IMG/VR virus record: IMGVR_UViG_3300028666_000022
Span: 186,001-250,000 of that record
Length of the DNA stretch: 64,000 nt
Reading direction: 5' to 3' (one strand)
The notes beneath the pieces are model-generated. The model searched no databases. It saw nothing but the letters and a program-made list of their open reading frames with translations, and was not told the origin of the DNA. This document shows positions 3,959-28,407 of this stretch, one piece after another. Every line of letters begins with the position of its first letter. The first letter of the stretch is position 1. The translations under genes were made by a program, and so were the position numbers.

Positions 3959-6820
3959 TTAAAACTTATTTTTATTCATTTTCATTAATGTATTAATTAA
4001 AAACTTATCACTATCAGTCATTTCATCAACATTATTTATTCTACTCTCAACATCTTCAATACTCTCTTGCGTAATATTATGTTTTTTTAAAATATTTTCA
4101 TGTATCTCTTTATCAACATCAACATTATTATCAGATTCAATTTCAAGTAAATCATGTGCTGGTTGAACATTTTCTTCAACAATAATTGCTTCAATAATAT
4201 CATTATTTTTAGAATTATCAAACTCTTTAATATTATTTCCAAAATCCATTATATCCCCAACAGTTCTATTATCAGAACCATCTGTTGGGATAGCATCACA
4301 TATTCTAGCATGAAATTCTACGGCACTTGCTTTACTCTCTAATTTCTTAATTTCATCATCACCATATTTTTTTATACCTTTATATCTATTACTAGTATAT
4401 CTATCATCCTTAATAATAATTTCCATACTATCATTATTGAAAATACAGTCTTTAAATGTTTGTCCATCTTGAGCAAATCTAGCTTTAAGAATTCTAATAT
4501 TAGCCAAATGTGCTTCTTTTTGATCTGGTGTTTTAGCTACCGACATAAAAAAATGTGCTTTCTGTAATCTTTTAATTGATCCACCAGTATGATGTGATTC
4601 TACTAATTCTTGATCGATTGATCCGCGTCCTCCCTGTAATGCCGACCATGATGGTATATCAAAATCTGCTGCCATTGCTTCAAATGATTTTATTACGACA
4701 AGTTCAGCATCATTTTTATCATTTGTTTTTTTATGTGAATCAACACAATCAAGATAATCAAGAACTAAAATATCAAACTTAAATCCATGTTTTTTTTGAT
4801 ATCTTAAAATCCAACTACGAATATCTTTCATTGTTGTATCTTCTTGACTCATTCTTTTAATAATAAGTCTACCCTTATTTCCTAATTGTTCTATTTTTTC
4901 ATTTACTTTCTTTATGACAATATCATTATTATCATTAATTTCACTTAATTTAACATCACTCCAAATAGTATAATGTTTCCTTTTAATTTGATCTTCCGTA
5001 TCTTCAAATATTATTTGAAGTACATTATAATCTAATTCACGTGCAGTATTAGCTATTTTAGTTAAAATCGTTGTATTATGTGTTAATATATAATCATCAG
5101 TAACATATAAATGATCATCATTTTCAACATATATACATTGTGCATCTTCTTCATGTGAATAAGAAATATTCGAAATATATTTATTATTTTTATATTTTTC
5201 TCTATAAATAACACGATCTTGTTTTCTTTTTAACCTAAATGGTATTAACGTATTGTCAGAAAACGATAATGTTAAAATATACGATTTTTGTCCAATTCTT
5301 ATTTCATTATTATATTTATATTTTGGTATTTTTTCTCGTATACTACAAAATCCACCCAAAGATAAAATTAATTCTTTTACGTCTAAAGCTAATTGTTTAG
5401 AAACACTACAATATTGTATTCTTCCATTTTTTGATGCGTAACCATCAGTATCTAATAAACCATTTAATAATAAAATTCTATTTTCAATACTATTATATTT
5501 GTAATCATCAGGTATAAATTTATTATTAGATAATTTATCAAATAAATTATATTTTTTTAATTCATTTGAACATTTAAATAATCTTATAACAAATAAATCA
5601 TTTTTTTTATTTTTTAATTGTTTTATTGATATATTTTTATCATAAAATTTTTTAATATTATTAATAATTTCAATATCTCCACTAGTTATACGACTATCTC
5701 TCATATAACCATCACCTAACATAGCTCCAATTACATAAGGATGGATTAATACATTTTTCTCATTAAAATTAACTGGTTGAATTATTGGTATTCTGTAATT
5801 TAATTTATTTTCTGATTTTCCGGTCAACCTATAATTTTTCAGTAATGAATCAACGGTTAATGGTTTATATGTATAATTTGGTTTTTTTATATATTTACCC
5901 TTTATTTTAGTACTTAATGTTCGTTGATTTATTGAATTTACTGCCCAAAGATGTTCTTTATCACAAAATGTGGTTGTTTGATCATTAAATTCAATTTTAT
6001 AAATCGGCCTTTTCCCTTGTGGAAAAACACCTAAAACCTTTTGTGATTTTCCATCACTTCCAATAACTAAATCATTAACTTTAACATCACCCATTTTAAT
6101 CCATCCATTTGGTGTAAGTATTTTGGATGTAAGAGGTTGTGCTTTACCAACGCCACTAGGTGTTAAAATTAAACCAATTTCACCTTTACCAAGACCCCCA
6201 CCAGTTAATTCATCAATTACTTGAATACCAGTTGGTATTGTTTGTCTAAATTCTTTTCTTAATGCTTTTTCAATTCCTTCAGTAACATCAGTACCATAAT
6301 CTTCATCATCACCAATATGTCCAATTTTTTGAATTTTTTCTTCAATTAAAGCCAGAGTATTTTTTATTTTAATATCTCCATTTTTTGTCTTATCTAAAAT
6401 AAATTCACCTAATTTTCTATATTCTTGTTGTCTTATGAATGTATGTGTTGCTTTTTGAATTACATCGCCATCGTGTAATAATTGTTTATTTAAAACTCTT
6501 TCATTCCATAATTCAATTCTCCTAATAACTGAAAATAATGATTCTTCTTCAATTACATTATTCGGAGTTTTAAACTTATTTATGGCTTGATGTATACTTT
6601 GATTTTGAAGATTAGGTACTTTCTCAAATTCCTTAATAAATTCAAGTATAATTAGAAATAATCTTTTTAAATTAGGATCATCAAAATATTCAACAGCAAT
6701 ATCTGGTATTATTTTTTCTGCAAATTCTGGTTCTACCAACAGTTGCCACATTAATCTTTGTTGAAATTCAGGACCTAAATATGCTGTTAAAGTATTATCT
6801 TTATCAATATGCTCACTCAT
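3959..6820 (-). CDS. Replicative DnaB/T4 gp41-like helicase, interrupted by an intein
   Basis: IPTGIQVIDELTGGGLGKGE, Walker A TPSGVGK/T split by the intein, Walker B ILVLDYLD, ALQGGR, ILKARF. Confidence 0.9.
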   Translation of the reverse strand: MSEHIDKDNTLTAYLGPEFQQRLMWQLLVEPEFAEKIIPDIAVEYFDDPNLKRLFLIILEFIKEFEKVPNLQNQSIHQAINKFKTPNNVIEEESLFSVIRRIELWNERVLNKQLLHDGDVIQKATHTFIRQQEYRKLGEFILDKTKNGDIKIKNTLALIEEKIQKIGHIGDDEDYGTDVTEGIEKALRKEFRQTIPTGIQVIDELTGGGLGKGEIGLILTPSGVGKAQPLTSKILTPNGWIKMGDVKVNDLVIGSDGKSQKVLGVFPQGKRPIYKIEFNDQTTTFCDKEHLWAVNSINQRTLSTKIKGKYIKKPNYTYKPLTVDSLLKNYRLTGKSENKLNYRIPIIQPVNFNEKNVLIHPYVIGAMLGDGYMRDSRITSGDIEIINNIKKFYDKNISIKQLKNKKNDLFVIRLFKCSNELKKYNLFDKLSNNKFIPDDYKYNSIENRILLLNGLLDTDGYASKNGRIQYCSVSKQLALDVKELILSLGGFCSIREKIPKYKYNNEIRIGQKSYILTLSFSDNTLIPFRLKRKQDRVIYREKYKNNKYISNISYSHEEDAQCIYVENDDHLYVTDDYILTHNTTILTKIANTARELDYNVLQIIFEDTEDQIKRKHYTIWSDVKLSEINDNNDIVIKKVNEKIEQLGNKGRLIIKRMSQEDTTMKDIRSWILRYQKKHGFKFDILVLDYLDCVDSHKKTNDKNDAELVVIKSFEAMAADFDIPSWSALQGGRGSIDQELVESHHTGGSIKRLQKAHFFMSVAKTPDQKEAHLANIRILKARFAQDGQTFKDCIFNNDSMEIIIKDDRYTSNRYKGIKKYGDDEIKKLESKASAVEFHARICDAIPTDGSDNRTVGDIMDFGNNIKEFDNSKNNDIIEAIIVEENVQPAHDLLEIESDNNVDVDKEIHENILKKHNITQESIEDVESRINNVDEMTDSDKFLINTLMKMNKNKF
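5075..6142 (-). mobile_element. Intein (356 aa, class 3-type, Ala1) with LAGLIDADG homing endonuclease
   Basis: Begins AQPLTSKILTPNGW after GVGK and ends YILTHN/T. Block B CDKEHLW, block F AQCIYV, LAGLIDADG motifs PYVIGAMLGDG and LLNGLLDTDG. Confidence 0.9.
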
Positions 6821-9879: not shown

Positions 9880-11496
9880 TTATTTTGTTTTAGGGAAAAA
9901 ATCATCTAACCAGCCATTTTTAGATGCAAAATCATAGAAACTTCTTTTTTTTGCTGCATAGTCTTTTCTACATGAATATTCTGTAGCATGATTTTTACAA
10001 ATAACATAATTATATTCAATTTTAGGTTTTTTTGGTAAAAATTCATCCAACCAATTAAATTTTACACAAACACGATATAATGTTTGGTTTTCTTTAGATA
10101 AAATACATCTATTCGAATATTTCAATGTTTCTTTTCTAGCATTTTCTTTATTTAAATAAAATTCTCTTGTTGTTAAATCTCTTTTTTTAATGGGGAATAA
10201 TTCATCTAATAAATTAAATTTAGTACAAAGACGATAAAGAGTATGATTCTTACTATAAAGCTCACTTCTGTTTTTAAATCCAACAACCTTATTTCTACAA
10301 TAAATTTCATCTTTATTTAATATTGGAAAAAATTCATTCAACCAATTATTTTCTAAGCAAATTCTATAGATTTTGGGGTTAGATTTATATAATTGTGTTC
10401 TATTTTCAAACTTTATTACTATATTTTTTATTTCTTCTTTATTTATTTTATTTTCAATTATTGGGAAAAATTCATCTAGCCATTTAGATTTTAAAGATTT
10501 AGAATATGCTGTTCCTTCATAATCGAAAAATGCTCTTTTATTAGTAAATTTAGATGCGACTAATTTACAACGAGATTTGGTCCAATAATTTTTTCCTTTA
10601 GATTTTTTTGTGTTCATATTAACACATACTTCATCTAAAATCCCCATTTGTTGAGCTGTTGAATAAGCACTACTGTTTTTAGCAAAAGCTGTACGTGTTT
10701 CAAATTTTTTTGCTTCTTCGAAAATTAGTTCTTTAGTCCACTTTCTTTGATTTCCACCTAAACTACCAGTTTTTGCTTTATTAATTTTTATTAATCCTTG
10801 TTTTTCTTTTTCTTCGAGAACAACACCTTCCATTTCAGATGCTAAATGAGCATTAATTATTCCAGAAATTTCTATTACTGGTTTAACACTATTTTTAATA
10901 ATATTATTTTTTTTTATAAATTCGAAAATACTACCTTCTCTCATATGATCACCATGTCTTCTTTTTATATTATTAGTTACACCAACATAAACATATTTAT
11001 CAAAAAATGTATATGAATATATCATTCTTTCTGTTTCTAAAACAACCGATTTTTTATTCATATGATCACATATTTCATTTAAAAAACCAGATTCTTTAGA
11101 AAAATTATAAATTTCTCGATTATTTTTATGAAATTCAGATTTAGTTTTCCATTTTTTAGAAAATTCTAAACATTCTAATTTAGACCATTTATCTAATTTA
11201 ATACATTCGTAAATTTCAGTAAGCCATCCATTTTGTCTAGCTACTGCACAAAGTGATAATTCTGAATGAGCCAACTCAAGTATTGAAGAATAAGTTCTAG
11301 CTATCTCCAAACATTTTGTTTTATTCCAAAATCCATTTGGTTTATGTTTTCTATTTAAATTTTTTAAAAGTTCTTTATTCCACCCTTTTCTATAAATTAA
11401 ATTATAAATGATTTTATTTTCCCTTTTTAAATCAATTAAATTCTCATAATTTTCAATTATTTTAATACAATCTTCTTTAGTATATAAACTTTTCAT
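9880..11496 (-). CDS. GIY-YIG endonuclease flanked by nine ~40-45 aa helical repeats
   Basis: IYSYTFFDKYVYVGVTNNIKRRHGDH...E...N catalytic core; repeats of the form W-T-K-x-x-C...Y...W-L-D-E-F-F-P. ATG at 11496 preferred over TTG at 11508. Confidence 0.75.
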   Translation of the reverse strand: MKSLYTKEDCIKIIENYENLIDLKRENKIIYNLIYRKGWNKELLKNLNRKHKPNGFWNKTKCLEIARTYSSILELAHSELSLCAVARQNGWLTEIYECIKLDKWSKLECLEFSKKWKTKSEFHKNNREIYNFSKESGFLNEICDHMNKKSVVLETERMIYSYTFFDKYVYVGVTNNIKRRHGDHMREGSIFEFIKKNNIIKNSVKPVIEISGIINAHLASEMEGVVLEEKEKQGLIKINKAKTGSLGGNQRKWTKELIFEEAKKFETRTAFAKNSSAYSTAQQMGILDEVCVNMNTKKSKGKNYWTKSRCKLVASKFTNKRAFFDYEGTAYSKSLKSKWLDEFFPIIENKINKEEIKNIVIKFENRTQLYKSNPKIYRICLENNWLNEFFPILNKDEIYCRNKVVGFKNRSELYSKNHTLYRLCTKFNLLDELFPIKKRDLTTREFYLNKENARKETLKYSNRCILSKENQTLYRVCVKFNWLDEFLPKKPKIEYNYVICKNHATEYSCRKDYAAKKRSFYDFASKNGWLDDFFPKTK

Positions 11497-11510
11497 TTTA
11501 AAATACAATT

Positions 11511-15644: not shown

Positions 15645-17615
15645 TTATTTTACACCCCTAAATTTCTTCCAAAGATTAAATAATTCTTCCCTTTGATTAT
15701 CATCTAAATTATCAAAACCAGCTTTTCTATATTCCAAATATTTTTGTTGATCTTGAGGTAATGTTGAAGTACTAGAATCTTCTTGAATTTCATCATTTTC
15801 TACTTCATCACCAACATTTTTTGGTTCAAAACCTAATAACATATCTGTCATTTGTTTATCTTTATCGTCATCAAAACCCATTTTACTAAAATCTGGTTCA
15901 ATTGCAGGTATTGGATCTTCATTTCTATCTAATTCTCCCGGCATACCTTCTTGATTTTCTTCAGCATCCATAGCTGCATTATATTGTGCTGAATCATTAG
16001 GACTATCCTTAACTGTGTAATACTTTTTATTGGTCGAAAGATGATCGATCACAATTTCAATAGCAAACATAGGATCATTAGTATGTTCCATTTCTACCTT
16101 TAATCCCATTAATATTTGTTCAGGATCAAATTCTAATGTTGAATTATTTTCACCATCACCACCGGGAATTAATTCACCAACTTCTTCTTTTTCTTTAGCT
16201 AATTGTTGTACTTTATCTACATCTGATTCTTCTGAATCATTATTAATTTCTACTCCCGTAGGTATTTCATCATTTTCAATTTCATCTTCTTCACCTAATT
16301 TAACCTTCTTTGTTTTATTTTTCTTTTTTTCACTAGGATAATTTTTCTCAGGACTAAATTCTTTTCCAATTGTATCTGGATAATCCCCTTCATTCATTCC
16401 TGTAGATATTTTTTCTTTATAATATTTTTCACCAGAAGGATCGTTATCTTGTTTTTCAAAAATATCATATTTTTCGCCTTTAATCATGTAACTACCTTGA
16501 TAAATTCCTTTACCTTCATAAAATTGACCAACTTTATATGTTAATGATTTGTTTTGTTTTTTTGAATTATTAATATTATTTGTTTTTTCTTTTTTTAATC
16601 TTTCAACTTCATTTTGAATTGAATCAATTGTTGTTTCTTCACCTCTATTTCTTAAATTAGAAATTGCTTGACGTATAATTGCTTGCTTATCTGGTGAAAT
16701 ATCGGGAATTTGTTTATTATTTGTTCTAGGTTTAGTTCTTGTTGGGTATTGGTCGGTTTCGATTTCATTAACGTTTTGATTTTCTAATTTATTTATTTCA
16801 GCTTGAATTTCATGAACATTAGGATGATATTGTGGTCTACCCATCTTTACTATTATATTATCAATTGCTTTTAAAATTAAAGCTTTCTTTTCTGGAGATA
16901 AACTTTCTAATGGAGATTTCGTACTTAAAATGCCTTTAGGTTTTGCTGGATATTCATTTCTAATATCACTTAATTCTTCTGCAATATATTTTTCTAATTC
17001 TGGAGATTTAGTTCTTAATTCAGGATTAACTGGTTTTTCATCTGCATATCCTTTTCCTGTTTGCATTCTATCTGAACCACCACCATAAGGATAACTATCT
17101 TTTTTCATTGCATCGATCATTTGTATTGCTTCAGCTAATTCATCTGATTGTAGTTCTGGACTTTTAACATCAACAAATTTACTTACAACATCATATAATT
17201 CATTACTATTTTGAGAATTAAAATTTGTTAAATCATTTTCATTCAATTCAAAAGTTTGTGTTCCATCACCATTTTTAAATGAAAACTTTTTTAATTCAAC
17301 TGTTTTAATATTATAAGTTCCATCTTGATCAGCTTCATCATAATTTACTTTAAAAATAAATTGATAATTATTTTTATTATCGTCCACGCCATTTATTTGA
17401 ACAATGCTTTCATCATCAGTCATTTGTATAGTGGTATTATTACTTCCACCACCTTGTATAGATAGTTCACCATTTTTTAATGCTTGAAATCCAGTAGTTA
17501 ATATACCATTAACGTCAATACCAGTATTAATATCTTCATTAATTTTTACTTTATTAACTTTTTCTATCATTTCAAAAAGTCTATCTTTACTACCTCTGGT
17601 TTTATAAATTTTCAT
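15645..17615 (-). CDS. Acidic multi-module protein with DUF5661-like domain, probable head-internal protein
   Basis: FDPEQILMGLKVEMEHTNDP...EIVIDHL...YY (DUF5661-like), internal helical duplication, several I/L/V-x-E sites. Confidence 0.55.
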   Translation of the reverse strand: MKIYKTRGSKDRLFEMIEKVNKVKINEDINTGIDVNGILTTGFQALKNGELSIQGGGSNNTTIQMTDDESIVQINGVDDNKNNYQFIFKVNYDEADQDGTYNIKTVELKKFSFKNGDGTQTFELNENDLTNFNSQNSNELYDVVSKFVDVKSPELQSDELAEAIQMIDAMKKDSYPYGGGSDRMQTGKGYADEKPVNPELRTKSPELEKYIAEELSDIRNEYPAKPKGILSTKSPLESLSPEKKALILKAIDNIIVKMGRPQYHPNVHEIQAEINKLENQNVNEIETDQYPTRTKPRTNNKQIPDISPDKQAIIRQAISNLRNRGEETTIDSIQNEVERLKKEKTNNINNSKKQNKSLTYKVGQFYEGKGIYQGSYMIKGEKYDIFEKQDNDPSGEKYYKEKISTGMNEGDYPDTIGKEFSPEKNYPSEKKKNKTKKVKLGEEDEIENDEIPTGVEINNDSEESDVDKVQQLAKEKEEVGELIPGGDGENNSTLEFDPEQILMGLKVEMEHTNDPMFAIEIVIDHLSTNKKYYTVKDSPNDSAQYNAAMDAEENQEGMPGELDRNEDPIPAIEPDFSKMGFDDDKDKQMTDMLLGFEPKNVGDEVENDEIQEDSSTSTLPQDQQKYLEYRKAGFDNLDDNQREELFNLWKKFRGVK

Positions 17616-17657: not shown

Positions 17658-18143
17658 TTATTCGAATATTTCTGGATATTTTTTCCCAAACTCTCTCATT
17701 ATTAAACCAGCTTTTGAATTTGCTTCGTTTTCAAATTCACTACCATCTTCACCCGAATCTGATTTTAATTTACCTTCTTTATATTGTTTAGTGTGTACTA
17801 ATTCATGTCCTAATGTTCTTAATACATCAGCTAAATTTCTATTAATTGCCACTACTCTTATTTCATTTGCTTCTGGTGTATTTTTACCAAAAGATTTCAT
17901 TTCTTGAGCTTCCTTATTATCATAAGATATTATGATTCTTGGATTATCATCACCTAATTCAAGTTTTTCTTTAACAAAATCAATAAAAATATTAATTATT
18001 TTATTCTTTTCATTAATAGGAAGTACTTCTTCGTTTAATTTCTTTACTGGTTTTTCTTCTTTTTTTTCAATAGGTAGTTTATTAACTTTTTTCATCATAT
18101 CAAAAAGTCTTTCCTTGCTACCTTTTTGGCTAAAAATTCTCAT
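17658..18143 (-). CDS. HExxH zinc-metalloprotease-like small protein, probable head-associated
   Basis: LRTLGHELVH...EFENEAN motif; N-terminus paralogous to 15645..17615. Confidence 0.6.
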   Translation of the reverse strand: MRIFSQKGSKERLFDMMKKVNKLPIEKKEEKPVKKLNEEVLPINEKNKIINIFIDFVKEKLELGDDNPRIIISYDNKEAQEMKSFGKNTPEANEIRVVAINRNLADVLRTLGHELVHTKQYKEGKLKSDSGEDGSEFENEANSKAGLIMREFGKKYPEIFE

Positions 18144-18171
18144 TAAAACATGTGAATTAAAATAAATTTAT

Positions 18172-18301
18172 AAAACATTCAATAATTATTTTTATCAGGA
18201 ATCTCGCTTCCGCTTCGAACACCATTAAAGAAATACTTAGTGTTCACCCTTGAGTCACTGTTCTTCCAGCTAAATAATCTACTCTTTGTATTGAATGTTT
18301 T
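18172..18301 (-). ncRNA. Candidate structured non-coding RNA (~130 nt rod-like fold)
   Basis: 13-bp terminal inverted repeat AAAACATTCAATA/TATTGAATGTTTT, apical GAACAC/GTGTTC stem, GC content visibly above background, no ORF. Strand assumed from flanking genes. Confidence 0.5.
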
Positions 18302-18317
18302 TATTTTCAAATATTTT

Positions 18318-19070
18318 TTAATCGTATTGACTAAAACTATTCTGTATATCTATTTTAGATGACTTCGGTAAATCATCAAAATCTGCAATATATGTACCAT
18401 CTGGTAATTCTCTTATACCTTTTTCTTTACCATTTCTTTCATTAAATGAATTGCCTTGCCAAAAATCATTTAAATTAAAATAATAAGGATATGATACATT
18501 CGTTTTATTCATTAATTTTTCACTATTTGTAGGTTCTCTAACCTCTTGAACATCTGCATTCAATGCTTCTAATTTAGAATTTAAACCCTGAACAGTAGTA
18601 TTTAAACCTTCTAATTGATCATTAATGCTTTGCATTGCTGCAATATTATGTTTAATTATATCATTCTGAATATCATCAACTTTTTGAACTGGTTGAATAG
18701 ATGCGTTAATATCTGCTCCCATTGGATTTACTGGGGCAGTAGTTGTAGGTGGAGCAATACCTGCAGTACTATCAATAGGTGGTTGTGTTGCTTCTCTATC
18801 AATTGGCTGATCATTTGATGGTGCAGGAGGTTCACTTCCTTCTGGTTTAGGTGCATCTTCTTGATCACCAGCTTCATTTGTAAAAGAAGGACTTGCTGGA
18901 ACAGGTAATCCATCACTAGTATTATATAATTCAACAGGAAGATTATCAAATTCTTCGTTATTATCTACCAGTGGACGATATTTAGGAGATTCATTGATCT
19001 TATAATCATAACGATATTTAATCTTCCTAAGTTGTTCCTCAAAAAGTTTATCTTTTTTTATATCTTTCAT
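18318..19070 (-). CDS. Hypothetical protein with Pro-rich linker and coiled coil, probable head-associated
   Basis: KINE and FTNE sites, acidic/Pro-rich middle, coiled coil, SYPYYFNLNDFW. Confidence 0.55.
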   Translation of the reverse strand: MKDIKKDKLFEEQLRKIKYRYDYKINESPKYRPLVDNNEEFDNLPVELYNTSDGLPVPASPSFTNEAGDQEDAPKPEGSEPPAPSNDQPIDREATQPPIDSTAGIAPPTTTAPVNPMGADINASIQPVQKVDDIQNDIIKHNIAAMQSINDQLEGLNTTVQGLNSKLEALNADVQEVREPTNSEKLMNKTNVSYPYYFNLNDFWQGNSFNERNGKEKGIRELPDGTYIADFDDLPKSSKIDIQNSFSQYD

Positions 19071-26097: not shown

Positions 26098-27821
26098 TTA
26101 AATAATATTATGTTCTCTTAAAATTTTCTCAATATTATCATAATCAAAATACGCAATTCTAATTAATTTAATATTTTTATCTTTAGCAAATTTATTTTTT
26201 ATTTCATCATTAATTTGTAGTTCTTTAAATTTTTCTTCTCCACCGAAATGTTTAATAATTTTATAATGTTGTATACCGTCAAATTCAATTAGAATGTTTT
26301 GTTCTGGTAAATAAAAATCAAATGGTAAAGATTTTTTATTTCTGCAATTTTCAAATTTTTTTTGATAAATAAAATTTATATTATTTTCTTTTAAAATTTC
26401 AGAAATTTTATTTTCACCCTTTGATTCGTTACATTTAGGACAACAATTATCACGATTTATAAAATTAATGTAACTTACATACCAAATATGATTATCTTTA
26501 TTACATCTTAAATGAATTTTTGTTTGATTATTTTTATATAAAAATTTTTCTATTAATTCATAATTTTTCTTTTTGCATTTATTTAGAACATTTTTTTCTG
26601 CTTCTTCTTGTGTTATTTTTAAAACATTAACACATTTAGAACATCCATGATCTTGACTCACAAAACTACTATAAATTGTTTTCCATATATAATTATCTTT
26701 TTTACATTTTAAATAAATAGTTGTTTCATTATTCACATATATAAAATTTTCAACTAATTCATAGTTTTTTTCTTTACATTTTTTCAAAACTTTTTCTTCA
26801 GCTTCTTGTTGTGTTATTTTTATACTATTTCCACATTTAGGACAACCTTGATTTTGATTAATAAAATTATCATATTTAACATTCCACACATAATTATCTT
26901 TATTACATTTTAAATGAATTTTTGTTTGGTTATTTTCATATGAAAAGTTTTCAACTAAGGTATAGTTTTTTTCTATACATTTTTTTCTGCTTCTCCTTGT
27001 GTTATTTTTGAAACATTACCACATTTAGGACATCCACTTTTATTATGAATAAAACTATCGTATGTTGGTGTCCATTTATACTCATCAATAGTACATTTTA
27101 AATGAATTTTTGTTTTTGTACCTTTATAAATAAATTTATCAAATAAAACATATTTTTTTTCTTTACATTTTTCTAAAACTCTTTCTTCGGCTTCTTGTTG
27201 TGTTATTTTTAAATTTCCATTACATTTAGGACAACCTTGATTTTTATTTATAAATTTATTATATCTTACAAACCATTCATGTTTATCTTTATTACATTTT
27301 AAATGAATTTTTGTTTTATGGTTTTTATAAATAAAATTTTCAACTAATATATAGTTTTTTTCTTTGCACTTTATTAAAACTTTTTTCTCTGCTTCTTCTT
27401 GTGTTATTAATGGTCTATTACCACATTTAGGACATCCACTTTTACTATGAATAAAACTATCATAAATTATATTCCATATATAATTATCTTTATTACATTT
27501 TAAGTGAATTATAGTATCGTTATTAACATATATAAAATTTTTAATTAATTCATAATTTTTTTCTTTACATTTCTCTAAAACTTTTTGTTCGGCTTCTTGT
27601 TGTGTTAATCTTAAGTTTCCACTACATTTAGGGCATCCTTGATTCTTACTAAGAAAATTATTATAAGTTACATACCAATCATACTTATCTTTGTTACATT
27701 TTAAATGAATTTTTGTTTTATTATTTTTATATGAAAAATTTTCAACAAGAATATAGTTTCTTTTCTCACACTTTTTAAAAACATTTTCTTCTGCTTCTTG
27801 TTGTGTTAATTTCTTTAACAT
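26098..27821 (-). pseudogene. Frameshift-split endonuclease: seven ~67-aa Zn-ribbon repeats plus C-terminal PD-(D/E)xK/Vsr-like nuclease
   Basis: ORFs 26973..27821 (4 CPKC repeats) and 26098..26889 (3 repeats + SKGENKI...LPFDFYLP...LIEFDGIQH) join in the -1 frame at the A7 run 26980-26986. Confidence 0.75.
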
Positions 27822-27855
27822 TAAATAATTTTAAACATAAATTTATTTTTAAATT

Positions 27856-28407
27856 TTAATAACAATATCCCAATTCCTTAGCCCCTTTTAATATTAATTC
27901 TTTATCTCTTTCACCTATTTTTCTTGCTGGACTTCCACCATAAATACACCACTGTTCAGTACTTTTTTTCAATAATGAATTTGCTGCTAAAACACTGCCC
28001 TCTGCCATTTCAACATAAGGTAATACAACAGAATTAACTCCCACTAATGAAAATCTTCTCATGATTATTTTATTACCAATAAGATTTCTATATTTTAATG
28101 GTACTATTGGATTTATTAATCCTTTTGTAAAATCATCACTTATAACCACAATTTTTGACCCCGATCCAATGTTTGTGAAGTCTTCCATAATTAATTCACC
28201 TGTAGGGCCACCTAGCACAGATACTCCATTTCCAATGTGTATATATGATCCTAATTCAGCAGAAACAGAAAAATAAACATATCCATCAATCGAAACATGA
28301 TTTTCAATTTCAACTAATTCTGGTTGTGTTATTTCACACCACTGATGGATTCTAACATCTTCACCAATTTTCTTAAAAAGATTATCATATCTATCGGTTC
28401 TTACCAT
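27856..28407 (-). CDS. Hexapeptide-repeat (LbH) acyltransferase
   Basis: IGEDVRI, HIGNGVSV, NIGSGSKI, VGVNSVVLP, YGGSPARKI. Confidence 0.85.
   Translation of the reverse strand: MVRTDRYDNLFKKIGEDVRIHQWCEITQPELVEIENHVSIDGYVYFSVSAELGSYIHIGNGVSVLGGPTGELIMEDFTNIGSGSKIVVISDDFTKGLINPIVPLKYRNLIGNKIIMRRFSLVGVNSVVLPYVEMAEGSVLAANSLLKKSTEQWCIYGGSPARKIGERDKELILKGAKELGYCY

What the first reader, a model, noticed from the sequence alone, without database searches (positions are those of the whole stretch)
18172..18301. ~130-nt GC-enriched intergenic element folding as a closed rod: candidate novel ncRNA
Seen (minus strand): AAAACAUUCAAUA-CAAAGAGUAGAUUAUUUAGCUGGAAGAACAGUGACUCAAGGGU-GAACAC-UAAGUAUUUCUUUAAUG-GUGUUC-GAAGCGGAAGCGAGAUUCCUGAUAAAAAUAAU-UAUUGAAUGUUUU. 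It has a perfect 13-bp closing stem, a further AUUAUUU/AAAUAAU helix, partial CAG..CUC/GAG..CUG pairing, an apical 6-bp stem, and purine-rich internal loops. It is far richer in G+C than other intergenic DNA here and is not a tRNA or simple terminator. Inference: a structured RNA in a late operon, such as a 6S-like RNAP decoy, a protein-sequestering anti-defence RNA, a ribozyme or processing element, or a MITE-like remnant.
Basis: partly seen in the sequence, partly recalled or inferred. Interest (0 to 1): 0.65.

Follow-up and report, generated by a model that had tools for sequence, protein, structure and literature searches.

The report
Orphan structured small RNA in jumbo phage
The 130-base intergenic element is a real small RNA gene whose fold is conserved in six related giant phages; in four of the other five it lies just upstream of a Ro60-like RNA-binding protein gene, but this phage has no such gene.

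Summary
The element (window 18172-18301, minus strand) is real and is a conserved structured RNA. It is not a rod, and I found no evidence that it lies in a late operon.

I found five homologues (core 80-90% identical) in related ~330-360 kb phages. Across the six copies, 96% of pair cells stay paired. Six pairs changed on both sides, and 0 of 500 shuffles matched this. G-U pairs place the RNA on the minus strand.

The fold has:
- a closing stem P1 (7-13 bp) whose sequence differs between phages but always pairs;
- a conserved 5' bulge;
- a 7-bp helix P1b;
- a junction with three hairpins, two of which kiss through a covarying 6-bp loop-loop helix.

No Rfam or tRNA match. It is single-copy in this genome.

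In all five relatives it follows a DnaB helicase gene and tRNA genes. In four of them it lies about 270 nt upstream of a Ro60-like gene (TROVE plus vWA fold), after a tRNA-like RNA. That is where a second Y RNA would sit.

Here it is inserted between two genes that abut in about 60 relatives, and this complete genome has no Ro60-like gene.

Best reading: an orphan, trans-acting, Y-RNA-like small RNA. Its function is inferred, not shown.

The parts
18172..18301 (-). Whole element, 130 nt, bounded by the closing stem P1.
   Evidence: Sequence. The covariance-model match of the core is 125-128 bits. It is an insertion relative to about 60 relatives.
18289..18301 (-). P1 5' arm (AAAACAUUCAAUA).
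   Evidence: Perfect 13-bp complement of 18172-18184. The other five members have different arm sequences that still pair over 7-9 bp at the same borders.
18172..18184 (-). P1 3' arm (UAUUGAAUGUUUU).
18280..18288 (-). 5'-side bulge between P1 and P1b (CAAAGAGUA). GAGUA is invariant in all six members.
   Evidence: Alignments A5 and A9.
18273..18279 (-). P1b 5' strand (GAUUAUU), which pairs with 18184-18190.
   Evidence: 7 pairs, 97.6% of cells paired, 2 pairs changed on both sides (U-A to G-C).
18184..18190 (-). P1b 3' strand (AAUAAUU).
18257..18270 (-). Hairpin H1: stem GCUG/CAGU with loop GAAGAA (18261-18266).
   Evidence: 100% of cells paired. One position shows C-G, G-C and A-U. Another shows G-U flipped to U-G.
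18247..18256 (-). Junction J1/2 (GACUCAAGGG), nearly invariant.
18216..18246 (-). Hairpin H2: 8-bp stem and 15-nt loop. Loop bases 18227-18232 (UUCUUU) kiss the H1 loop.
   Evidence: Stem: 100% paired, with 2 pairs changed on both sides. Loop-loop helix: 6 bp, 100% paired, with A-U changed to G-C.
18198..18215 (-). H3 region (AAGC GGAA GCGAGA UUCC). Either a GGAA/UUCC hairpin or, better supported, a GC-GGAA-GC mini-hairpin with a GNRA-type loop.
   Evidence: GGAA/UUCC is paired in only 83% of cells. Three members carry a 22-24 nt hairpin in place of the tetraloop, and its closing pair varies between C-G, U-G and U-A.
18191..18197 (-). Junction J3/1 (UGAUAAA), invariant.
18318..19070 (-). Upstream gene, 250 aa, unknown function, with a coiled-coil-like middle part.
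   Evidence: ORF. 64 relatives at 41-65% identity. No Pfam or PHROG match.
17658..18143 (-). Downstream gene B, 161 aa, with an HExxH motif and a conserved N-terminal leader.
   Evidence: Weak Pfam Tox-MPTase3 and Peptidase_M91 matches, both below cut-off.
18179..18310 (-). 43-aa TTG open frame over the element. Judged not to be a gene.
   Evidence: Its likeness to the leader of genes B and C is not significant: about 0 bits, and it is not among the 30 best six-frame pieces of the genome. The frame is not kept in the homologues, which differ by indels of 1 and 18-19 nt, not multiples of three.

Best explanation
The element is a gene for a small structured RNA, made from the minus strand like all its neighbours.

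Shown:
- It belongs to a family with six distinct members in one clade of ~330-360 kb phages.
- The fold is under selection. It consists of a closing stem (P1 plus P1b, with a conserved 5' bulge) carrying a junction with three hairpins. The first two hairpins are tied by a loop-loop helix.
- In all five relatives it follows a DnaB helicase gene and tRNA genes.
- In four of those relatives it follows a tRNA-like RNA and lies about 270 nt upstream of a Ro60-like gene on the same strand.
- It is a discrete cassette whose indel borders coincide with P1.

Inferred:
- It is transcribed within a longer RNA and released by cleavage in or near the P1 stalk.
- It then acts in trans as a Y-RNA-like partner, as scaffold or gate, of a Ro60-type ring protein and an exoribonuclease such as PNPase.
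- In this window's phage the Ro60 module is absent. The copy has been moved between two genes that otherwise abut. It would therefore have to work with a host protein, or it has a Ro60-independent role.

Sub-confidences:
- Real structure-constrained RNA on the minus strand: about 0.9.
- Cassette that normally sits in the tRNA/Ro60 locus: about 0.85.
- Y-RNA-like function: about 0.35.
For: Homologues:
- L091 (E 2.6e-24), L109 (79 bits), L121/L122 and L123, L126.

Covariation:
- All 11 substitutions at paired positions between the window and L091 keep the pairing.
- Across six sequences, 96.3% of cells are paired, 6 pairs changed on both sides, and 0 of 500 shuffles match. Slid controls give only 29-50% paired.
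- The kissing helix is 100% paired and has one compensatory pair.
- P1 has six different arm sequences, all complementary.

Strand:
- Conserved G-U pairs exist only on the minus strand.
- The element is co-oriented with the flanking genes and tRNAs in all six loci.

Cassette:
- Empty sites with the same flanks occur in L113 and L115.
- In about 60 relatives the 250-aa gene is followed within 0-10 nt by the next gene.

Ro60 link:
- The gene downstream of the element in L091, L121, L123 and L126 models as an alpha-solenoid plus an alpha/beta domain.
- The 10 best PDB matches to that model are all Ro60, Rsr or TROVE (E 2.7e-5, prob 1.0).
- Atlas features point to TROVE/vWA_Ro60 clusters.
- A tRNA-like RNA with the arm order T, acceptor-like stem-loop, D lies upstream.

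Precedents:
- Y RNAs are 80-130 nt with a long terminal stem, lie within 4 kb of Ro60 on the same strand, and often come in pairs upstream of rsr (PMC4201824).
- Thermus phage phiLo has two Y-like RNAs upstream of its Ro60 (PMC12135203).
Against: - This complete genome has no TROVE gene, no homologue of the Ro60-like protein and no tRNA-like T-arm RNA.
- The 18.6 kb held of L109's 22.6-kb contig also carries the element without a Ro60-like gene.
- At least ten relatives have the Ro60-like gene but no element, so it is not an obligatory partner.
- The GNCGAA/CGAA motif and the T and D arms that define YrlA-type Y RNAs are absent or not conserved.
- There is no Rfam Y_RNA match.
- No transcript evidence exists: no RNA run holds the locus.
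- The Ro60-like assignment rests on a moderate model (pLDDT 69.5, TM about 0.3).
- Only six sequences are known, and five of them are close to each other.
Confidence: 0.5

Rival explanations
1. A trans-acting stable small RNA that is a passenger of phage tRNA clusters and has nothing to do with Ro60. It would be comparable to T4 RNAC and RNAD. It could serve, for example, as a decoy or sponge for a host nuclease or defence protein.
For: - In all five relatives it lies at the distal end of a tRNA cluster, followed by the same spacer motif that precedes each tRNA.
- T4 has two RNAs of 119 and 139 nt at the same relative position. Their roles are unknown (PMC3014915 and PMC9697503).
- The element occurs without a Ro60-like gene in this genome and in the part of L109's contig that I hold.
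Against: - It has no sequence or structure likeness to T4 rnaC or rnaD.
- Four of the five relatives place it directly before the Ro60-like gene.
- In the window it is not near any tRNA.
Confidence: 0.25
2. A self-cleaving ribozyme or cis-acting processing module that cuts the polycistronic transcript, whether a tRNA precursor or an operon mRNA.
For: - It has a compact pseudoknotted fold with invariant junction nucleotides and covarying stems.
- It is a sporadically distributed cassette found in unrelated gene contexts.
- Small ribozymes beside phage tRNAs are known, for example theta ribozymes (bioRxiv 10.1101/2023.06.13.544163, listed).
Against: - It matches no Rfam ribozyme family even at E up to 10.
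- The CUGAUAA stretch lacks the G of the hammerhead CUGANGA box. The hammerhead consensus here is from memory.
- There is no cleavage-site evidence.
Confidence: 0.12
3. A cis-regulatory leader, such as a riboswitch or a translational or stability element, for the gene downstream.
For: - It ends 28 nt before the ATG of gene B.
- It has a complex fold with conserved unpaired bases.
Against: - The downstream gene differs between loci: a metallopeptidase-like gene here, a Ro60-like gene in four relatives and a fibre-like gene in L109.
- In L109 a terminator-like hairpin separates it from the next gene.
Confidence: 0.05
4. A DNA-level element: a MITE or other small transposon, a recombination site or an origin hairpin.
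For: - It has terminal inverted repeats.
- It shows clean presence/absence polymorphism and lies at two different genomic positions within the clade.
Against: - It is single-copy in the genome.
- The termini differ between members while the interior is conserved.
- Several conserved G-U pairs would be C-A mismatches on the other strand.
- No target-site duplication is visible.
Confidence: 0.05
5. A decayed 5' fragment of a paralogue of the leader-bearing genes B and C, or a real 43-aa gene.
For: - A TTG frame starts 7 nt after the upstream stop codon, where the next gene starts in relatives. It begins MKIK...K.RLF, which is reminiscent of the shared leader.
Against: - The profile score is about 0 bits, and the frame is not among the 30 best six-frame pieces of the genome.
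- Homologues lie in non-coding tRNA regions and differ by indels that break the frame.
- The substitutions follow base-pairing, not codons.
Confidence: 0.02

Closest known systems
Bacterial and phage Y RNAs (YrlA/YrlB; Yrl1/Yrl2 of Thermus phage phiLo), partners of Ro60/Rsr
   Same: - The size is similar, about 125-145 nt.
- The 5' and 3' ends pair into a long stem with a bulge, and there is a multi-hairpin distal module.
- In four of the five relatives it lies on the same strand within 300 nt upstream of a Ro60-like gene, next to a tRNA-like RNA. Known rsr loci likewise carry two Y RNAs (PMC4201824, PMC12135203).
   Different: - It has no conserved GNCGAA/CGAA motif and no T-arm or D-arm mimic.
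- It has a kissing-loop junction instead.
- It is absent from many relatives that have the Ro60-like gene.
- It is present in this genome, which has no Ro60-like gene at all.
T4 RNAC and RNAD (species 1 and 2 stable RNAs)
   Same: - They are small RNAs of 119-139 nt with unknown role.
- They are encoded at the distal end of a phage tRNA cluster on the same strand.
   Different: - There is no sequence or covariance-model likeness.
- T4 rnaC has a T-arm-like 3' hairpin and this element does not.
- The window's copy is not in a tRNA cluster.
Long-range processing stalks that flank rRNAs and some phage transcripts (RNase III substrates)
   Same: The closing stem is formed by the two flanks of the functional RNA. 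Its sequence is free but its pairing is maintained.
   Different: - Cleavage has not been shown.
- The stalk is short, 14-20 bp including P1b, and is interrupted by a 9-nt bulge. The comparison is from memory.
Small self-cleaving ribozymes of phages (hammerhead, twister, HDV-like theta)
   Same: - It is a compact junction fold with tertiary loop contacts and invariant junction bases.
- Its occurrence is sporadic and cassette-like, sometimes beside tRNAs.
   Different: It matches no known class, and no cleavage site has been identified.

Membership tests
Y RNA (Ro60-associated; criteria of PMC4201824) | Encoded within about 4 kb of a Ro60/TROVE gene on the same strand. | tested here: not met
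   Window genome: no TROVE match in six frames and no homologue of the relatives' Ro60-like protein. In relatives L091, L121, L123 and L126 the feature is met: the element lies about 270 nt upstream on the same strand.
Y RNA (Ro60-associated; criteria of PMC4201824) | 80-130 nt, with a long stem formed by the 5' and 3' ends plus a large internal loop or module. | tested here: met
   125-145 nt. P1 plus P1b form a terminal stem with a conserved bulge, and there is a branched distal module.
Y RNA (Ro60-associated; criteria of PMC4201824) | Conserved GNCGAA(N)G / CGAA motif in the Ro-binding stem. | tested here: not met
   CGAA occurs in only three of six members, at non-equivalent places, and never in the terminal stem.
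Y RNA (Ro60-associated; criteria of PMC4201824) | tRNA-like T and D arms (YrlA type). | tested here: not met
   No tRNA by ARAGORN. No Rfam tRNA match at E up to 10. The hairpin loops are GRAGAA, a 15-nt loop and GNRA.
Y RNA (Ro60-associated; criteria of PMC4201824) | Physical binding to Ro60/Rsr. | not testable with these tools
   Needs EMSA or co-purification.
Any Rfam 15 family (including 6S, SRP, tmRNA, ribozymes and riboswitches) | Covariance-model score at or near the gathering threshold. | tested here: not met
   No match in the whole window at gathering thresholds. At E up to 10 on 17900-18600 only a chance MIR405 match appears outside the element.
6S RNA | A rod of about 180 nt with a central open-promoter-like bubble. 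| tested here: not met
   The covariation-supported fold is a branched junction of 130 nt.
MITE / small transposon | Multiple copies, conserved terminal inverted repeats and a target-site duplication. | tested here: not met
   One copy in 340 kb. The terminal arms differ in all six members. No duplication is visible at the borders.
T4 RNAC/RNAD-type tRNA-cluster RNAs | Position at the end of a tRNA cluster, and homology to rnaC or rnaD. | tested here: not met
   The position is met in the five relatives but not in the window. There is no model match to T4 rnaC or rnaD.

The most novel reading that the evidence does not exclude
This is a new class of Ro60-locus small RNA that lacks the tRNA-like module of known bacterial Y RNAs. 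It has become independent of a phage-encoded Ro60. As an orphan in this phage, it captures a host Ro60/Rsr-PNPase-type RNA-decay or repair machine, or another host factor, for the phage's benefit. Alternatively, it is an undescribed self-cleaving ribozyme class.
Probability: 0.2. Interest if true: 0.75.

Novelty: new variant of a known kind. Interest (0 to 1): 0.58.

Why it matters
- It adds a covariation-supported, pseudoknotted RNA family to giant soil phages. No current Rfam model detects it.
- It links that family to a phage Ro60 / tRNA-like RNA module. How phage Ro60 particles work, and what their RNA partners are, is only beginning to be studied (one structure so far, from Thermus phage phiLo).
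- An RNA that survives, with its structure intact, in a phage that has lost the Ro60 gene gives a natural test of whether such RNAs act through host proteins.
- It also shows that small RNA genes move as discrete cassettes within these genomes.

Tried and rejected
1. Decayed-paralogue or small-ORF idea: rejected.
2. Closing stem as statistical evidence: 13-bp long-range inverted repeats are at chance level in this genome.
3. Rfam searches, a tRNA scan and blastn against GenBank phages: nothing.
4. Paralogues in the own genome: none. The other G+C-rich gaps are unrelated.
5. Pattern scans:
   - One search was wasted by my own typing error, one extra C in the pattern.
   - L093-L095, L098 and L111 were chance matches in high-G+C coding DNA.
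   - No copy was found in 185,579 prokaryote genomes with two strict patterns. This does not exclude diverged copies.
6. Covariance-model search of nine large relatives (G002-G010) and 66 syntenic loci: no copy.
7. Sequencing runs: only DNA runs from rhizosphere, peat and soil hold the locus, and none is RNA. Laid contigs show identical copies in two further samples but no informative variants within the element.
8. Homology to T4 rnaC or rnaD: none.
9. Sigma-70 promoter and terminator scans near the window's copy: nothing above shuffles.
10. Pfam, PADLOC and PDB sequence searches of the Ro60-like protein were blank. Only the fold search and the Atlas features identified it.

Full report
**What is there**

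The window is bases 186001-250000 of a complete 339,898-bp virus record with direct terminal repeats and 25% G+C. Contigs matching it come from rhizosphere, peat and soil metagenomes.

On the minus strand, gene order is: a 250-aa gene (18318-19070), a 174-nt gap, a 161-aa gene B (17658-18143), then a 656-aa gene C. The gap holds the 130-nt element at 18172-18301, exactly as quoted, with a perfect 13-bp inverted repeat at its ends.

**How strong the single-sequence signal is**

It is weak.
- The MFE is -27.7 kcal/mol, with z = -2.65. The opposite strand does as well, with z = -2.76.
- Perfect 13-bp inverted repeats with a spacer of 60 nt or more occur 10 times in the genome, against 8.0 +/- 2.9 in composition-matched random sequences.
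- The G+C claim holds. The core is 36% G+C, in the top 0.75% of 102-nt windows in non-ORF gaps.
- Rfam gives nothing at gathering thresholds or at E up to 10.
- There is no tRNA and no second copy in the genome.

**A first lead that failed**

A 43-aa TTG frame covers the element. It starts 7 nt after the upstream stop codon, which is where the next gene starts in relatives. It begins MKIK..K.RLF, which resembles the N-terminal leader shared by genes B and C and their homologues.

A profile of that leader scores the frame at about 0 bits, and the frame is not among the 30 best six-frame pieces of the genome. I dropped the coding-remnant idea. The later homologues settle it, because they lie in non-coding DNA and differ by frame-breaking indels.

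**Homologues**

Exact-pattern scans, followed by look-ups around a neighbouring protein, found five further distinct versions:
- L091 (also seen as L092 and L096): 82% identical over 108 nt, E 2.6e-24.
- L109.
- L121/L122 and L123.
- L126.

L091's other genes are syntenic with the window at 59-77% protein identity. L109 lies on the same contig as a homologue of the 250-aa gene. L121, L123 and L126 share the Ro60-like protein with L091 at 89-92% identity. So the carriers belong to the same clade of giant phages.

**Structure**

Between the window and L091 the 102-nt core differs at 19 positions. Eleven of these lie in predicted pairs, and all eleven keep the pair: five double changes and one A-U to G-U.

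With six sequences:
- 96.3% of pair cells are standard pairs.
- Six pairs changed on both sides.
- 0 of 500 shuffles reach this.
- Sliding the partners by 1-3 columns drops pairing to 29-50%.

The helices are:
- **P1b:** 7 bp.
- **H1:** 4 bp. One position shows C-G, G-C and A-U, and another shows G-U flipped to U-G.
- **H2:** 8 bp.
- **Kissing helix:** 6 bp between the H1 loop (G-R-A-G-A-A) and the H2 loop (U-U-C-U-Y-U). It is paired in every sequence, with one A-U to G-C exchange.

The third hairpin is less certain.
- GGAA/UUCC is paired in only 83% of cells.
- A GC-GNRA-GC mini-hairpin fits better. In three members it is replaced by a hairpin 22-24 nt longer, and its closing pair varies between C-G, U-G and U-A.

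The closing stem P1 has a different sequence in each member but pairs over 7-13 bp at the same borders, with compensatory changes among the close relatives.

Several conserved G-U pairs would be C-A mismatches on the other strand. The element has the orientation of its flanking genes and tRNAs in all six loci. It is therefore an RNA made from the minus strand.

**Genomic behaviour**

In about 60 relatives the next gene starts within 0-10 nt of the stop of the 250-aa gene. That next gene is B or an extra leader-bearing gene. The element is therefore an insertion in this phage.

In all five relatives it lies elsewhere: after the DnaB-like helicase gene and one to three tRNA genes. Relatives L113 and L115 have the same flanks without the element, and the indel borders fall at P1.

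Nine large relatives, six of them complete, and several closer contigs lack it altogether.

It is thus a discrete, sporadically kept cassette that has changed position at least once. Its termini vary while its interior is conserved, and it is single-copy. That pattern is the reverse of a MITE.

**Functional context**

In L091, L121, L123 and L126 the element ends about 270 nt before a 545-aa gene on the same strand. That gene is followed by an ARPP-1 domain gene.

The 545-aa protein has no Pfam match. Other evidence identifies it as Ro60-like:
- Its model (pLDDT 69.5) is an alpha-solenoid followed by an alpha/beta domain.
- The ten best PDB matches are all Ro60, Rsr or TROVE structures (E 2.7e-5). 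Two of the ten are from a Thermus phage Ro60.
- Atlas features point the same way.

Upstream of the element these loci carry a tRNA-like RNA. Its order is T-arm, acceptor-like stem-loop with an encoded CCA, D-arm, then an anticodon-like hairpin. T, then acceptor-like stem-loop, then D is the order described for YrlA Y RNAs (PMC4201824).

Known rsr loci, and phage phiLo, carry two Y-like RNAs upstream of Ro60. A comparative genomic survey of jumbo phages reports TROVE-domain proteins in a subset of them (PMC7824862). The element sits where the second Y RNA would.

**Against a simple Y-RNA label**

- The window's complete genome has no TROVE gene, no homologue of this protein and no such tRNA-like RNA.
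- The 18.6 kb I hold of L109's 22.6-kb contig also carries the element without the Ro60-like gene.
- Many relatives have the protein without the element.
- The CGAA motif and the T and D arms are missing.

I therefore describe it as Y-RNA-like by architecture and by location in relatives. It is not a demonstrated member of that family.

**Most likely mechanism (inferred)**

1. The element is transcribed within a longer RNA. Here that is read-through from the 250-aa gene. In relatives it is the tRNA precursor.
2. The P1/P1b stalk forms and is cleaved.
3. The compact kissing-loop core then acts in trans as a protein-binding RNA.

In this phage it would have to use a host partner or have a Ro60-independent role.

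Rivals are a Ro60-unrelated tRNA-cluster RNA like T4 RNAC/RNAD, a self-cleaving or processing module, a cis-regulator, and a DNA element. No RNA data exist to choose between them.

**Limits**

- There are only six sequences, and five are close to each other.
- Collection-wide searches used exact patterns, so diverged members will have been missed.
- The Ro60-like assignment rests on a moderate model.
- 'Late operon' is unverified. The identifiable genes in the same minus-strand block are replication-type.

Noticed in passing
window 17658-18143 (-), window 15645-17615 (-), and own genome 3761-4285 (-) outside the window: Three genes begin with the same roughly 25-aa leader, M-[KR]-[IV]-[FY]-x3-G-S-K-E-R-L-F-E-M-x3-V-N. 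It is conserved in more than 60 relatives on two or three adjacent genes. It resembles a capsid-targeting or protease-cleaved propeptide (S-x-E and L-x-E motifs, as in T4 internal proteins; that comparison is from memory). Gene B carries an HExxH motif with weak metallopeptidase-toxin Pfam matches.
   Followed up: partly
window 3959-6820 (-): The DnaB-like helicase is 953 aa, against about 700 aa in L091 and L109. It has an insertion of about 1 kb that matches the LAGLIDADG_3 and Hom_end Hint domains, so it is probably an intein. Relatives L130 and L132 have a 1085-aa version with the same domains.
   Followed up: partly
L091 about 4860-4990 (-); also L121, L126, L113 and L124 between tRNA-Met and the Ro60-like gene: A circularly permuted tRNA-like RNA. 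Its order is T-arm (GGUUCGAAUCC), acceptor-like stem-loop with an encoded CCA, D-arm, then a 5-bp hairpin with a 7-nt anticodon-like loop. The central triplet of that loop varies between phages (CGU, CUU, AUU). It looks like a YrlA-type Y RNA or a permuted tRNA gene.
   Followed up: partly
L091 2606-4246 (-) and 1497-2594 (-); homologues in G002-G005: A Ro60-like protein of about 545 aa with no Pfam match, 74-92% identical across many giant-phage contigs. It is followed by an ARPP-1 (PF20208) protein. This looks like an RNA-repair or RNA quality-control module, and it is absent from the window's phage.
   Followed up: yes
L091 4250-5703 (-), L113 and L115: A repeated spacer motif of about 25 nt (GAAGAACUGAUAGUGUUUUCAGUAA and variants, a small hairpin) precedes each tRNA or tRNA-like gene and follows the element. 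It may be a processing signal or a recombination substrate for cassette shuffling.
   Followed up: no
L091 about 4615-4760 (-) and the aligned parts of L109, L113 and L115: A further conserved non-coding block of about 120 nt lies just upstream of the element's site. It is present whether or not the element is there. It is not found in the window's genome.
   Followed up: partly
own genome 29811-29960, 293389-293500 and 252784-252930 (outside the window): Other non-ORF islands with 39-48% G+C in a genome whose non-ORF DNA is 20% G+C. They have no Rfam match and no likeness to this element, and may be further RNA genes.
   Followed up: partly
own genome about 11389-11424 (outside the window): A sub-threshold match to the Rfam abiF RNA motif: 30.1 bits against a gathering score of 37.
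   Followed up: no
window 26431-27923: Six tandem copies of a 201-nt unit (62-77% identical) inside two adjacent minus-strand ORFs (26098-26889 and 26973-27821). These are proteins made of 67-aa repeats.
   Followed up: no
window 9880-11508 (-): A 542-aa protein with a weak GIY-YIG nuclease domain match in its middle. It is possibly a homing-endonuclease insertion or fusion.
   Followed up: no
L009, L012, L013, L016, L020, L021, L023, L031, L045, L054 and L063-L067, just after the 250-aa gene homologue: Some relatives carry an extra leader-bearing gene (83-216 aa) in exactly the slot where this phage has the RNA element. The junction is therefore a hot spot for insertions.
   Followed up: partly
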